DNA from: Macrostomum hystrix
Lineage: Eukaryota > Animalia > Platyhelminthes
Direction of reading: 5' to 3'
Length of the DNA: 64,000 bases
NCBI GenBank assembly: GCA_950097015.1
Contig: CATNEN010000041.1
Location: forward strand, 2,108,001 to 2,172,000
A program made the position numbers and the translations under genes. The first letter of the stretch is position 1. Every line of letters begins with the position of its first letter. Below the pieces are notes generated by a model. The model did not search any database and had not been told where the DNA came from. It worked only from the letters and a program-made list of their open reading frames with translations. Below, piece by piece: positions 45,330 through 47,860 of the stretch.

Positions 45330-47860
45330 GTGAGTACTTATTGAATGTTAGCAATATAACGATTTTTATTGTATATAATGTTAGATGCATTTTTATTAGA
45401 ATTTTTTTCACTCAATTTTGATTGATATTTGTGTTTTGCATTTGTACAATCATATTGCAAACCTTTACAACCAACCAGTGCAAAAATATTCTGGCTTGTC
45501 AAGGTTTTTTGTAAAACCTTTTTTGTAAAGGTTTTTTGTAAAAAAAATCAGTGCAATTTGCAACAAAAAATCCAGACTTGCAACTAGGTTTAGGCATCAA
45601 AATTCAAATATATTGCATTTACTATTTCTGAGGCAGAACACAAATTTTATTTTCAAGCTAACAAGCTATAAACAATTTACTAAGAAAGGTGAAAAAATTC
45701 GAAATGTTTCTAAAAATTTGTGTTGTGAAAACATAAAAAATGGTTAAGAACTAAGTTTTGCAAAAGTTCTGAAAGTCATGCACTTTATGCTCATAGTCCA
45801 GATCATGCTAGGTGCATACCAGAACAAAATCAGAGTTTTTATTTTGCATGCCAATGCAAAGCAGATGCATGCCAAGACATATTGTGATGAATTTTTGCTT
45901 GCCAAAAGTTTTAATGTATTTTAATGAAATAAAAAAGTATAAATTCAATGTATTCAACATTTGTTAAGAAAATTACTTGAGTAGAAATAGCATATTATAT
46001 TGACTATTGCCATTTTATAGTTATATGAGAAAATTGATATATGCAAATATTACATTCCATGATTTAACACTTAAGGCATTCAACAGATACATTTCTTTGA
46101 ACTGATTATAAGTCTTTGTATTTTTCACCTATTCTGTGTATCCTTGCATTTTTTATATGCACATGCTGCAGCACTGCATGGTGGATTCGTGCATTGCTAT
46201 GCATGCCGAATTGCCAAGCCTTCTGCATGCCAGCCCATGCCACACAATTGCTTTTGCATGCCAGTGTATGCCAACTTTTCAATTGCATGCCAGAATTTTC
46301 CGATTAAACTGGCATCATTTGGACCATAGCTTTATGCCTTAATCTTTTTGCACATGAATACAGTTTGGGCCTTGATTCTAAATTTTTGAATGATGATGAT
46401 GATGATGCAATGATGATGATACAAAAATTTGGCATCAAAGATGATGTCAAAATTTTCAATAAAAAAGTTGGGTGTAGTAACTTTAATGAGTCCCTTGTCC
46501 TATAAGCCTTAGTATTTGTAGAGGCTCTAATAGCCTAAACTGGGCAGTAGGCATGATTTGAATGGATATCATCTACTTGTATAGGGCAGCAGTCTAGACA
46601 TAAAATGCCTGGCCTAAGCAAAGTGAGACCTGGCTAAGTGAGCCTTGCTAGCTTTTGGCTAAACATAGTATTTAGCTAAAATGCCCTGTCCTAAAATTAG
46701 CATTTTATTGCATAATTTTAAAGCAGCCAAAATATGGTAGCTTGGCATGCCACATATGCCATTTGGATCATTTGTAAATGAGTAAATGAGAAGCTAGAAA
46801 TTAAAATCAGGGACTAGCTAGGAATAAAAATAACTGGATATTGGGTCTATTTGCCCAGAGCTCATTTGGTGCTAATGAAATATTCATATGAATTCTAGTC
46901 TAATAATGTGTAGCTGAATTTGGTATATTAAGTAATGGAAACTCAACAGCTATTTATAATTCTAACTGTTGAAATAAATACCCTAGATGCTAAATTAATG
47001 TTTTCTGCCACTGGCTAAATACAATTTATTTTCATATTACCTTAGCCACTTAATAGCTATAATAAAACAGAGTTAAATAGCTAATTTAATGAATTAAAAC
47101 AACACTCAAACAATTGTACCAAGTTTGTAATTGTTATTGTTATTGTGACCATAGAAAGAACAGCTTATTTTTTGCAAATATTTTTTGCAGTTCTTCTTGG
47201 TAAATAAATTTAACACCAAGCAAATAATGAAATGGTTATTCTTATTACAGTAATAAACTTTAGGAGGCCTTGTATTTTAAGCTTGTTGTGCTTTATTGTT
47301 ATTTTAAAGTTGGTGCATATTGTCTAGCTGGGCTACCATCTGTTGTATAGAAAGCAAATTTATATGTGGATTGATTTACAAGTCATGTTATCATAAACAA
47401 GGAATAGTATAATGTGGTACCCCAACTTGATGCATGAGCACCTTGCTATATTGGTTATTATTTCTATATGAATAATTGCCAGCCAGTTCATGAGTACTTT
47501 AACATAAAATATTATTTAACATTGTAATATAAGTTTAATATTAACATGTGATAGCCTACTATACAAGCTAGTATAGTTTGTCTTTCATAAAGTATTGGTC
47601 TTTATGATCACTGTGACTTGGGCTCTTTGCCAACTTTGGCTCTTTGCTACCTGGCTATATGCAGACCTGTTTTGTTTGCCAGATTTTTATATGAAGCAAA
47701 TATGATCCCAAATGTTGATGATCTGAAATTCAAAAATCAACTGATGAAGTACTGAATATAATGAGATAAATTTTAAATAGCATTCTTTAATCTTGGATTT
47801 TGACCAATTCCTAATTAAGCATTTAGTGAGAGCAGTGTTTATCTTTGATGATCCCCGCAG

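What the first reader, a model, noticed from the sequence alone, without database searches (positions are those of the whole stretch)
45370..47850. CpG desert confined to dlg intron 1: promoter-proximal methylation or mutation domain
Seen: about 4 CpG in ~2.45 kb. CpGs return immediately at exon 2 and stay abundant in unique parts of later introns (e.g. 48300..48800). The mirror region 40250..44650 and block 1150..3050 behave similarly, while laminin intron 1 and the HEPN/ANK intergenic DNA do not. Known: invertebrate gene-body methylation usually covers bodies or exons of broadly expressed genes. Inference: a germline mark limited to the span from promoter to first acceptor of housekeeping genes, possibly tied to early elongation or outrons. 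This could be an undescribed epigenetic layout.
Basis: partly seen in the sequence, partly recalled or inferred. Interest (0 to 1): 0.8.

Follow-up and report, generated by a model that had tools for sequence, protein, structure and literature searches.

The report
Flatworm CpG desert filling dlg intron 1
The first intron of a Macrostomum flatworm's discs-large gene has lost almost all its CpG sites in the way methylated DNA does, as part of a sharply bounded domain around a protected promoter; this points to a local germline methylation pattern not yet described in free-living flatworms, but no methylation data could be examined.

Summary
Positions 45361-47855 hold 4 CpG where about 61 are expected (o/e 0.07). 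The edges lie 30 bp from the dlg exon-1 donor and 5 bp from the exon-2 acceptor.

The signature fits 5-methylcytosine decay, not RIP and not AT-richness alone:
- TpG/CpA is raised (o/e 1.43) by about the amount of CpG that is missing, and TpA is not raised.
- Other AT-rich DNA in the window keeps CpG at o/e about 1.

CpG hypermutability is specific to these domains:
- An exon copy inside the sister desert lost 12 of 16 CpG, with only 5 other changes.
- SINE copies outside the deserts differ by about 12% yet keep 13 of 14 CpG.

A collinear M. lignano locus has a desert at the same place upstream of laminin. One repeat arm inside that desert lost 5 of 5 CpG that its twin outside kept.

Best reading: discrete germline CpG-methylated non-coding domains flank protected promoter islands. 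M. lignano keeps DNMT1 and DNMT3.

The scan had already noted similar deserts elsewhere in this genome.

The parts
45361..47855 (.). CpG desert D-C (the finding): 4 CpG, o/e 0.07, GC 0.31, TpG/CpA o/e 1.43, TpA o/e 0.82, GpC o/e 2.06
45311..45329 (+). Coding part of dlg exon 1 (MPIKKQ plus the first base of Asp), followed by a GTGAGT donor at 45330
   Evidence: Read from the sequence. Exon 2 aligns to Dlg L27 from chain residue 8-10 onward, leaving room for about 7 residues upstream.
45330..47860 (+). dlg first coding intron (GT at 45330-45331, AG at 47859-47860); the desert fills it
   Evidence: The splice sites are inferred from sequence and reading frame, not from RNA.
47861..47992 (+). dlg exon 2, encoding the L27 domain
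   Evidence: Pfam L27_1 E=4e-20. PDB Dlg1/SAP97 L27 chains 4rp3, 3lra and 1rso, E=3e-13 to 1e-9.
44701..45360 (.). CpG-retaining island (27 CpG, o/e 1.29 at GC 0.36) holding dlg exon 1; presumed divergent promoter of dlg and the RRM/RING gene
   Evidence: The promoter role is inferred.
40195..44700 (.). Sister desert D-B (35 CpG, o/e 0.26, patchy) between the island and an acceptor about 6 nt upstream of the RRM/RING ATG
42459..42791 (.). Element inside D-B with 36-bp terminal inverted repeats (97%). It carries a copy (42601-42743) of RRM-gene exon sequence 38560-38702 that lost 12 of 16 CpG through 14 CpG transitions, against 2 other transitions and 3 transversions.
38120..40141 (-). RRM/RING-like ORF (673 aa) divergent from dlg; CpG o/e 0.93; acceptor-like ctgcccgcag ends at about 40148
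   Evidence: The best relative is an M. lignano RRM protein fragment, 78% identical.
1162..3076 (.). Desert D-A (2 CpG, o/e 0.05) upstream of the laminin promoter region
   Evidence: An M. lignano desert sits at the same position.
3077..4070 (+). Laminin promoter-proximal DNA, exon 1 (3543-3600, signal peptide) and intron 1 (3601-4070); AT-rich but CpG-normal (o/e 0.71-0.95). Serves as a control.
   Evidence: Exon 1 aligns to L001 9992-10042.
46201..46305 (+). Decayed minisatellite of about 28 bp (GCATGCCA units) inside D-C. It holds 2 of the 4 surviving CpGs (46207, 46301), and a third (46188) lies just upstream. Unit 1 has GCCG where the other units have GCCA.
11735..12063 (+). tRNA-derived SINE copy outside the deserts (twin at 36231-36512 on the other strand), used as a control. 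The 115-nt heads differ by about 12%, yet across the full-length alignment 13 of 14 CpG in this copy and 13 of 15 in its twin are kept.

Best explanation
The intron belongs to a discrete, long-lived domain of germline CpG methylation. In the germline, DNMT1/DNMT3-type methylation is kept over about 7.7 kb of AT-rich non-coding DNA (40195-47855). This DNA lies on both sides of the divergent dlg / RRM-RING promoter. A 660-bp island (44701-45360) around dlg exon 1 stays unmethylated. Spontaneous deamination of 5-methylcytosine then turns CpG into TpG/CpA roughly 15 times faster than other bases change, so the domain has run out of CpG. Exons and downstream introns are not methylated and keep their CpG. 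The domain ends where non-coding DNA meets the first GC-rich downstream exon of each gene, which is why it coincides with dlg intron 1. Shown: the depletion, its sharp limits, the TpG/CpA excess, domain-specific directional CpG decay in paired copies, and a desert at the same position in a second Macrostomum genome. Inferred: that the cause is 5mC, that it acts in the germline, that the island is the promoter, and what recruits the methylation.
For: 1) There are 4 CpG against 61 expected. The TpG+CpA excess over baseline (about 87) matches the 57 missing CpG, and TpA is not raised.
2) CpG o/e of unique tiles is bimodal. Low tiles occur only in three blocks, while other AT-rich tiles sit near 1.
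3) A captured exon copy inside D-B lost 12 of 16 CpG, all in the exon-CG to copy-TG/CA direction. CpG bases changed 14 of 32 against 5 of 109 elsewhere (Fisher P=4e-7).
4) Outside the deserts, SINE copies about 12% diverged keep 13 of 14 CpG. CpG bases changed 3 of 20 against 11 of 95 (P=0.7).
5) The collinear M. lignano locus L001 (exons 68-84% identical) has an unalignable desert at 6607-8980 upstream of laminin, with a CpG-normal promoter and intron 1. An inverted-repeat arm inside that desert lost 5 of 5 CpG that its twin 550 bp away, outside the desert, kept.
6) M. lignano is reported to retain DNMT1 and DNMT3 and to have low 5mC (PMC11292947, PMC9246332, PMC10658182).
7) In D-C, TpG exceeds CpA on the sense strand (218 v 165, P=0.008), as expected if the intron is transcribed in the germline.
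Against: The decay evidence comes from D-B and from M. lignano; D-C has no paired copy, so its evidence is compositional only. The paired-copy samples are small (16, 14 and 5 CpG sites). Several AT-rich controls lie in a HEPN gene block that is absent from the M. lignano locus and may be young DNA. D-B shows no strand asymmetry (318 v 320). The window's species is not M. lignano itself (55-78% protein identity), so the presence of DNMTs is extrapolated within the genus.
Confidence: 0.55

Rival explanations
1. The methylated (or otherwise mutagenic) state is set by transcription-unit anatomy. It spans from the promoter to the first 3' splice site (first intron or outron) of broadly expressed genes, as a chromatin domain bounded by the first acceptor, and this holds genome-wide.
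For: All three deserts end within about 50 bp of an acceptor-like site just before or at a coding exon: 47860 for dlg, about 40148 for the RRM gene, and possibly about 1171 before the ORF at 578-1141. All three start at a CpG-retaining island. In L001 the desert lies upstream of an acceptor-flanked minus-strand exon (5971-6148). An unchecked scan note reports 'CpG-free first introns on both sides of a CpG-retaining bidirectional promoter' on another piece. Laminin, which is not a housekeeping gene, has a CpG-normal intron 1 in both genomes.
Against: There is no transcript evidence for any TSS, outron or non-coding exon. The acceptor at 1171 and the gene behind it are guesses (no Pfam match). 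Other unchecked notes place deserts upstream of genes, over an exon 1, and between exons 3 and 4. Nothing explains why a transcription-coupled mark would stop at exon 2. Only three deserts were examined here.
Confidence: 0.22
2. Fossil or age effect. Methylation once covered, or still weakly covers, all non-coding DNA. Only old, stable DNA such as this intron has had time to lose its CpG, while minisatellites, new insertions and duplicated blocks are too young.
For: Later dlg introns are dominated by young minisatellites. The HEPN block that supplies several controls is absent from M. lignano and may be recent. CpG sites in arrays outside deserts show a modest threefold excess of transitions.
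Against: SINE copies outside deserts are older (12% diverged) than the exon copy inside D-B (about 4.5% non-CpG divergence), yet they keep their CpG. Laminin intron 1 cannot be aligned between the two genomes yet is CpG-normal in both, and the neighbouring desert is depleted in both. The repeat twins in L001, 550 bp apart, differ in CpG fate.
Confidence: 0.1
3. Transposon-targeted methylation. The deserts are old mobile-element DNA silenced by methylation, which spreads to fill the intron.
For: D-B contains a TIR element with a captured exon piece, a 158-bp inverted repeat pair and another inverted repeat. Unchecked scan notes report CpG-decayed SINEs and a Merlin transposon in other deserts.
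Against: D-C shows no transposon trace. There is no similarity to anything else in the window, no ORF of 70 aa or more and none resembling a transposon gene by eye (the short ORFs were not scanned against protein families), no Rfam hit, no terminal repeats and no decayed copy of the window's SINE. SINE copies elsewhere in the window are not decayed, so being a repeat is not sufficient.
Confidence: 0.08
4. No methylation is involved. The depletion comes from a local compositional or mutational bias of AT-rich DNA, or from selection against CpG in the intron.
For: The desert is AT-rich (GC 0.31) with an odd GpC excess (o/e 2.06). No direct methylation data exist here.
Against: Equally AT-rich DNA nearby has CpG o/e 0.9-1.3. 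The changes in paired copies are CpG-specific transitions in one direction. RIP-like CpA-to-TpA change is excluded by the normal TpA level.
Confidence: 0.05

Closest known systems
Mosaic invertebrate methylomes read from bimodal CpG o/e (gene-body methylation of broadly expressed genes; PMC11292947, PMC7343188)
   Same: Two sharply different CpG o/e classes occur within one genome, a TpG/CpA excess marks the low class, and DNMT1 and DNMT3 are reported for the genus.
   Different: The low class here is AT-rich non-coding DNA next to promoters, not exons. The dlg and RRM exons have o/e 0.93-0.98. In arthropods methylation is exon-enriched (PMC7343188).
Vertebrate-type CpG-island promoter in a methylated, CpG-poor background
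   Same: A short CpG-retaining island holding exon 1 is flanked on both sides by CpG-exhausted DNA.
   Different: The depleted background is only a few kb wide. The rest of the window, including exons, later introns and other intergenic DNA, is CpG-normal.
First-intron methylation and first-intron chromatin domains in vertebrates (PMC6025724; from my own knowledge, the H3K79me2-to-H3K36me3 switch at the first 3' splice site in human genes)
   Same: In both, a state is bounded by the promoter and the first acceptor.
   Different: In vertebrates first-intron methylation is a quantitative variable within a globally methylated genome and falls with expression. Here the intron would be the only methylated part of the gene. 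No histone or methylation data exist for this locus.
Fungal RIP and AT-rich methylated relics
   Same: Both give sharply bounded AT-rich blocks with C-to-T/G-to-A decay of duplicated DNA.
   Different: RIP acts mainly on CpA and raises TpA. Here TpA o/e is 0.82 and the changes are at CpG. D-C is not duplicated within the window.
TE and promoter methylation gained in Strigamia maritima and Planococcus citri; exon-poor methylation in Parhyale hawaiensis (PMC7343188)
   Same: These are animals in which methylation is not exon-centred and can lie upstream of genes.
   Different: In those species it accompanies high genome-wide or TE methylation. Here the deserts are small islands in an otherwise CpG-normal genome, and SINE copies outside them are untouched.

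Membership tests
Germline 5mC-deamination footprint (CpG-depleted methylated domain) | CpG strongly under-represented relative to base composition and to comparable local DNA | tested here: met
   o/e 0.07 against about 1 in other AT-rich tiles
Germline 5mC-deamination footprint (CpG-depleted methylated domain) | Matching excess of TpG/CpA without an excess of TpA | tested here: met
   TpG/CpA o/e 1.43. The excess is about 87 against 57 missing CpG. TpA o/e is 0.82.
Germline 5mC-deamination footprint (CpG-depleted methylated domain) | CpG transitions many-fold faster than other substitutions, in one direction, inside the domain only | tested here: met
   Met for D-B (12 of 16 CpG lost, P=4e-7) and for the M. 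lignano desert (5 of 5 lost). The SINE control outside deserts shows no excess. Not testable for D-C itself, which has no paired copy.
Germline 5mC-deamination footprint (CpG-depleted methylated domain) | 5mC actually present on the remaining CpGs, and DNMT1/DNMT3 encoded by the genome | not testable with these tools
DNMT1/DNMT3 and low 5mC are reported for M. lignano only through citing papers.
Canonical invertebrate gene-body methylation | Depletion covers the exons and introns of the gene body | tested here: not met
   dlg PDZ exon o/e 0.98, RRM ORF 0.93, unique part of intron 2 0.85
RIP-like hypermutation | CpA-to-TpA bias with raised TpA/ApT, acting on duplicated DNA | tested here: not met
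   TpA o/e 0.82. Only 2 of 19 changes in the exon copy are non-CpG transitions. D-C is unique within the window.
Transposon-directed methylation | The depleted DNA is recognisably transposon-derived | tested here: inconclusive
   D-B holds TIR and inverted-repeat elements. D-C shows none by self-BLAST, ORF listing, Rfam, repeat search or transition-tolerant SINE alignment. No genome-wide repeat library was available.
   Met at this locus only. Limits are 45360/45361 against the donor at 45330, 47855/47856 against the acceptor at 47860, and the mirror end 40195 against the acceptor at about 40148. Splice sites are sequence-inferred.
   Only this window and one M. lignano locus were available, with no RNA data. 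Unchecked scan notes point both ways.

The most novel reading that the evidence does not exclude
Macrostomum flatworms confine germline CpG methylation to the stretch between a protected (often bidirectional) promoter island and the first 3' splice site, that is, to first introns and outrons. Exons and the rest of the gene stay unmethylated. The layout is conserved in position between species while the underlying sequence turns over. This would be a DNA-methylation read-out of a first-intron chromatin domain, a layout not described in any animal.
Probability: 0.22. Interest if true: 0.8.

Novelty: new variant of a known kind. Interest (0 to 1): 0.55.

Why it matters
[quoted passage not shown] Macrostomum is the flatworm model reported to keep DNMT1 and DNMT3. 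Sequence alone here predicts where germline methylation sits: in small, sharply bounded, positionally conserved non-coding domains beside promoters, not in exons and not on every repeat. If a methylome confirms this, it is a layout different from the exon-centred pattern of other invertebrates. It would also be a tractable system, since transgenesis is available in M. lignano, for asking what recruits and what bounds DNA methylation. If the methylome does not confirm it, a CpG-specific, domain-limited mutation process without methylation would need explaining.

Tried and rejected
- **Reads.** There is no RNA, bisulfite or depth evidence.
- **Orthologous dlg/RRM locus.** Exact look-ups of three window ORFs failed. 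Two word searches with the RRM/RING protein were blank. Because the word search and family scans had left that protein open, I ran the one big search on it. It found only M. lignano UniRef fragments with no contig on record.
- **Spliced models.** dlg was searched exon by exon, by reference.
- **RIP.** Rejected, because TpA is not raised.
- **AT-richness alone.** Rejected on the controls.
- **Transposon origin of D-C.** Nothing was found by self-BLAST, ORF listing, Rfam, repeat search or transition-tolerant alignment to the window's SINE, where the best score only equalled the shuffled maximum.
- **Mirror-image transcription strand asymmetry.** Present in D-C (P=0.008) but absent in D-B, so it is not used as evidence that D-B is transcribed.
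- **Minisatellite units as a CpG-rate clock.** Too confounded by unit duplication. The results range from 0 of 160 to 18%.
- **Other.** Wasik 2015 could not be read. The ORF at 578-1141 and the L001 exon at 5971-6148 gave no family or homology.

Full report
**What is there.** The window comes from a Macrostomum flatworm. The best relatives of its laminin and RRM proteins are M. lignano proteins at 55% and 78% identity. An M. lignano scaffold piece, L001, is collinear with the window's laminin exons at 68-84% DNA identity. So this is another Macrostomum genome, or an old homeolog, rather than M. lignano itself.

The flagged stretch is the first coding intron of a discs-large gene. Exon 1 ends at 45329 after MPIKKQ plus one base, and a GTGAGT donor follows. 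The intron ends with ccccgcAG at 47860. Exon 2 (47861-47992) encodes the L27 domain (Pfam L27_1, E=4e-20). It aligns to solved Dlg1/SAP97 L27 chains from their residue 8-10 onward. I searched the exons one by one, by reference, and did not build or search a joined model.

Between CpGs at 45360 and 47856 there are exactly four CpGs: 45700, 46188, 46207 and 46301.
- For 45361-47855 the expectation from base composition is 61, so o/e is 0.07 and P is about 5e-19.
- CpG is normal in the 660 bp upstream (44701-45360, o/e 1.29), in exon 2, and in the unique part of intron 2 (o/e 0.85).
- With minisatellites masked, CpG o/e of 167 unique 300-bp tiles is bimodal. All 22 tiles below 0.3 fall in three blocks: D-A 1162-3076, D-B 40195-44700 (patchy) and D-C 45361-47855. 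The other 27 tiles with GC below 0.40 are not depleted.
Laminin intron 1 (o/e 0.95) and the HEPN-ANK spacer (0.94) are AT-rich but not depleted.

**What kind of depletion it is.**
- In D-C, TpG/CpA o/e is 1.43, against 1.03-1.16 in the AT-rich controls. The excess of TpG+CpA (about 87) is of the size needed to account for the 57 missing CpG.
- TpA is not raised (0.82), which excludes a RIP-like CpA-to-TpA process.
- The high GpC o/e (2.06) is what remains when C and G are lost from other contexts. A decayed GCATGCC minisatellite at 46201-46305 adds to it.

**Direct evidence that CpG is hypermutable inside deserts and not outside.**
- Inside D-B, an element with 36-bp terminal inverted repeats carries a 143-bp copy of the neighbouring RRM gene's exon. 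The copy lost 12 of the exon's 16 CpGs, three of them on both strands. That is 14 CpG transitions against 2 other transitions and 3 transversions: CpG bases changed 14 of 32, other bases 5 of 109, P=4e-7. The changes run almost entirely in one direction.
- Outside the deserts, two copies of a tRNA-derived SINE (11735-12063 and 36231-36512) differ by about 12% in their heads. They still keep 13 of 14 and 13 of 15 CpGs, with no excess change at CpG (P=0.7).
- The younger pair inside a desert is therefore far more CpG-decayed than the older pair outside. This argues against a pure age effect.
- Minisatellite units outside deserts give a noisy threefold CpG excess, including 0 of 160 in the largest array. 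Unit duplication confounds this, so I do not rely on it.

**Comparison with M. lignano.**
- In L001 a unique-sequence desert (6607-8980, preceded by a CpG-free minisatellite; o/e 0.07) ends about 1 kb upstream of the laminin start codon. The promoter region, exon 1 and intron 1 are CpG-normal (o/e 1.0-1.7).
- This is the layout of the window's D-A plus laminin 5' end. Neither the deserts nor the introns can be aligned between the two genomes.
- Two classes of AT-rich non-coding DNA thus keep their class at corresponding positions while the sequence itself has turned over. That requires a persistent, position-specific process in both lineages.
- At the L001 desert's edge, one arm of a 118-bp inverted repeat (8863-8980, inside) has lost all five CpGs that the other arm (9522-9631, outside) keeps, with one change the other way.

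**Most likely mechanism.** These results fit germline 5-methylcytosine deamination confined to discrete domains. M. lignano is reported to retain DNMT1 and DNMT3 and to have low overall 5mC (PMC11292947, PMC9246332, PMC10658182). [quoted passage not shown] The original bisulfite paper (Wasik 2015) is not in the library.

**Does it track "promoter to first acceptor"?** At this locus it does.
- D-C starts 30 bp after the exon-1 donor and ends 5 bp before the acceptor.
- On the other side of the island, D-B runs to within about 50 bp of an acceptor-like site (ctgcccgcag, about 40148). That site lies 6 nt before the ATG of the divergent RRM/RING gene.
- D-A ends near a weaker acceptor-like site (about 1171) before an unidentified ORF.
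- In L001 the desert lies upstream of an acceptor-flanked minus-strand exon that is not in the annotation.
- D-C also shows more TpG than CpA on the sense strand (218 v 165, P=0.008), as expected for a germline-transcribed intron. D-B shows no such bias.

Against a general rule:
- No TSS or outron is supported by RNA.
- The gene next to D-A is a guess.
- Only three deserts were examined.
- Unchecked notes from other windows of this genome describe deserts upstream of genes, over an exon 1, and between exons 3 and 4, as well as one more case of [quoted passage not shown].

I therefore commit to the generic reading: discrete methylated non-coding domains flanking a protected promoter island (0.55). 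I hold the strict first-intron rule as the main alternative (0.22).

**Other rivals.**
- Transposon-targeted methylation fits D-B, which holds TIR and inverted-repeat elements. It does not fit D-C, where I found no trace of a mobile element. SINEs outside deserts are also untouched.
- A fossil or age effect is contradicted by the paired-copy comparison and by the conservation of both classes between genomes.
- A non-methylation bias does not explain CpG-specific, one-directional change next to CpG-normal AT-rich DNA.

**Caveats.**
- Several of my AT-rich controls lie in the HEPN block, which is missing from the M. lignano locus and may be young. The stronger controls are laminin intron 1 in both genomes, the island and the SINE pair.
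- The paired-copy samples are small.
- D-C itself has only compositional evidence.
- The presence of DNMTs is extrapolated from M. lignano.

**Novelty and verdict.** The kind of signal, a CpG-decay footprint of mosaic germline methylation, is well known. The placement is not the usual one: small, sharply bounded, positionally conserved non-coding domains beside promoters, with exons spared. I found no description of it for flatworms in the searchable literature. I rate it a new variant of a known kind, of moderate to good interest. The scan has flagged the same phenomenon many times elsewhere in this genome. This report adds paired-copy and cross-species evidence that the decay is domain-specific and conserved in position.

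Noticed in passing
window 45845-46290 (also 47431): TGCATG, the RBFOX-type UGCAUG motif, occurs 8 times on the dlg sense strand in intron 1 against once on the antisense strand. A first-order Markov model expects 2.5 +/- 1.6 (max 7 in 500 simulations). Most copies sit in a decayed GCATGCCA minisatellite, so this could be a splicing-regulator cluster or just repeat ancestry.
   Followed up: partly
window 42459-42791: Small element with 36-bp terminal inverted repeats (97% identical) carrying a 143-bp captured piece of the neighbouring RRM gene's exon (38560-38702). 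It resembles a gene-fragment-capturing non-autonomous DNA transposon.
   Followed up: partly
window 11735-12063, 36231-36512 (other strand), 14501-14667: Three copies of a tRNA-derived SINE (GGTTCGATTCC box-B-like head, about 14 CpG) in laminin introns and in the ANK-RRM spacer. It may be the CpG-rich SINE family that other scan notes saw decayed inside deserts, but I did not compare them.
   Followed up: partly
window 43622-43779 and 44237-44388; 41769-41861 and 42327-42451: Two inverted-repeat pairs (158 bp at 85% identity; 67-69 bp at 80-87%) inside the sister desert, possibly foldback or MITE-like elements.
   Followed up: no
window 21525-33659 against L001 29527-31400: The block with the two HEPN genes (about 12 kb between laminin and the ANK gene) is absent from the collinear M. 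lignano locus, where the gap is about 1.9 kb. This is a lineage-specific insertion or deletion.
   Followed up: no
L001 5971-6148 (minus strand): Unannotated, CpG-dense, acceptor- and donor-flanked open exon (58 aa, no Pfam match, no match in the window). It lies just beyond the M. lignano desert, which suggests an unannotated minus-strand gene whose intron holds the desert.
   Followed up: partly
window 38120-40141 (minus strand): The 673-aa protein has a C-terminal RRM, a cysteine-rich RING-like N-terminal part and long Ala/Pro/Gln tracts. Outside the RRM it has no relatives apart from M. lignano fragments. Two word searches were blank, and in the big search only the RRM region matched other organisms.
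   Followed up: partly
window, most introns of laminin and dlg (for example 7621-8068, 10872-11695, 49611-51063, 52842-54534, 62483-63997): Nearly every intron outside the deserts carries a long, young minisatellite of 20-50 bp units (up to 80 copies). The deserts carry none apart from one decayed relic.
   Followed up: no
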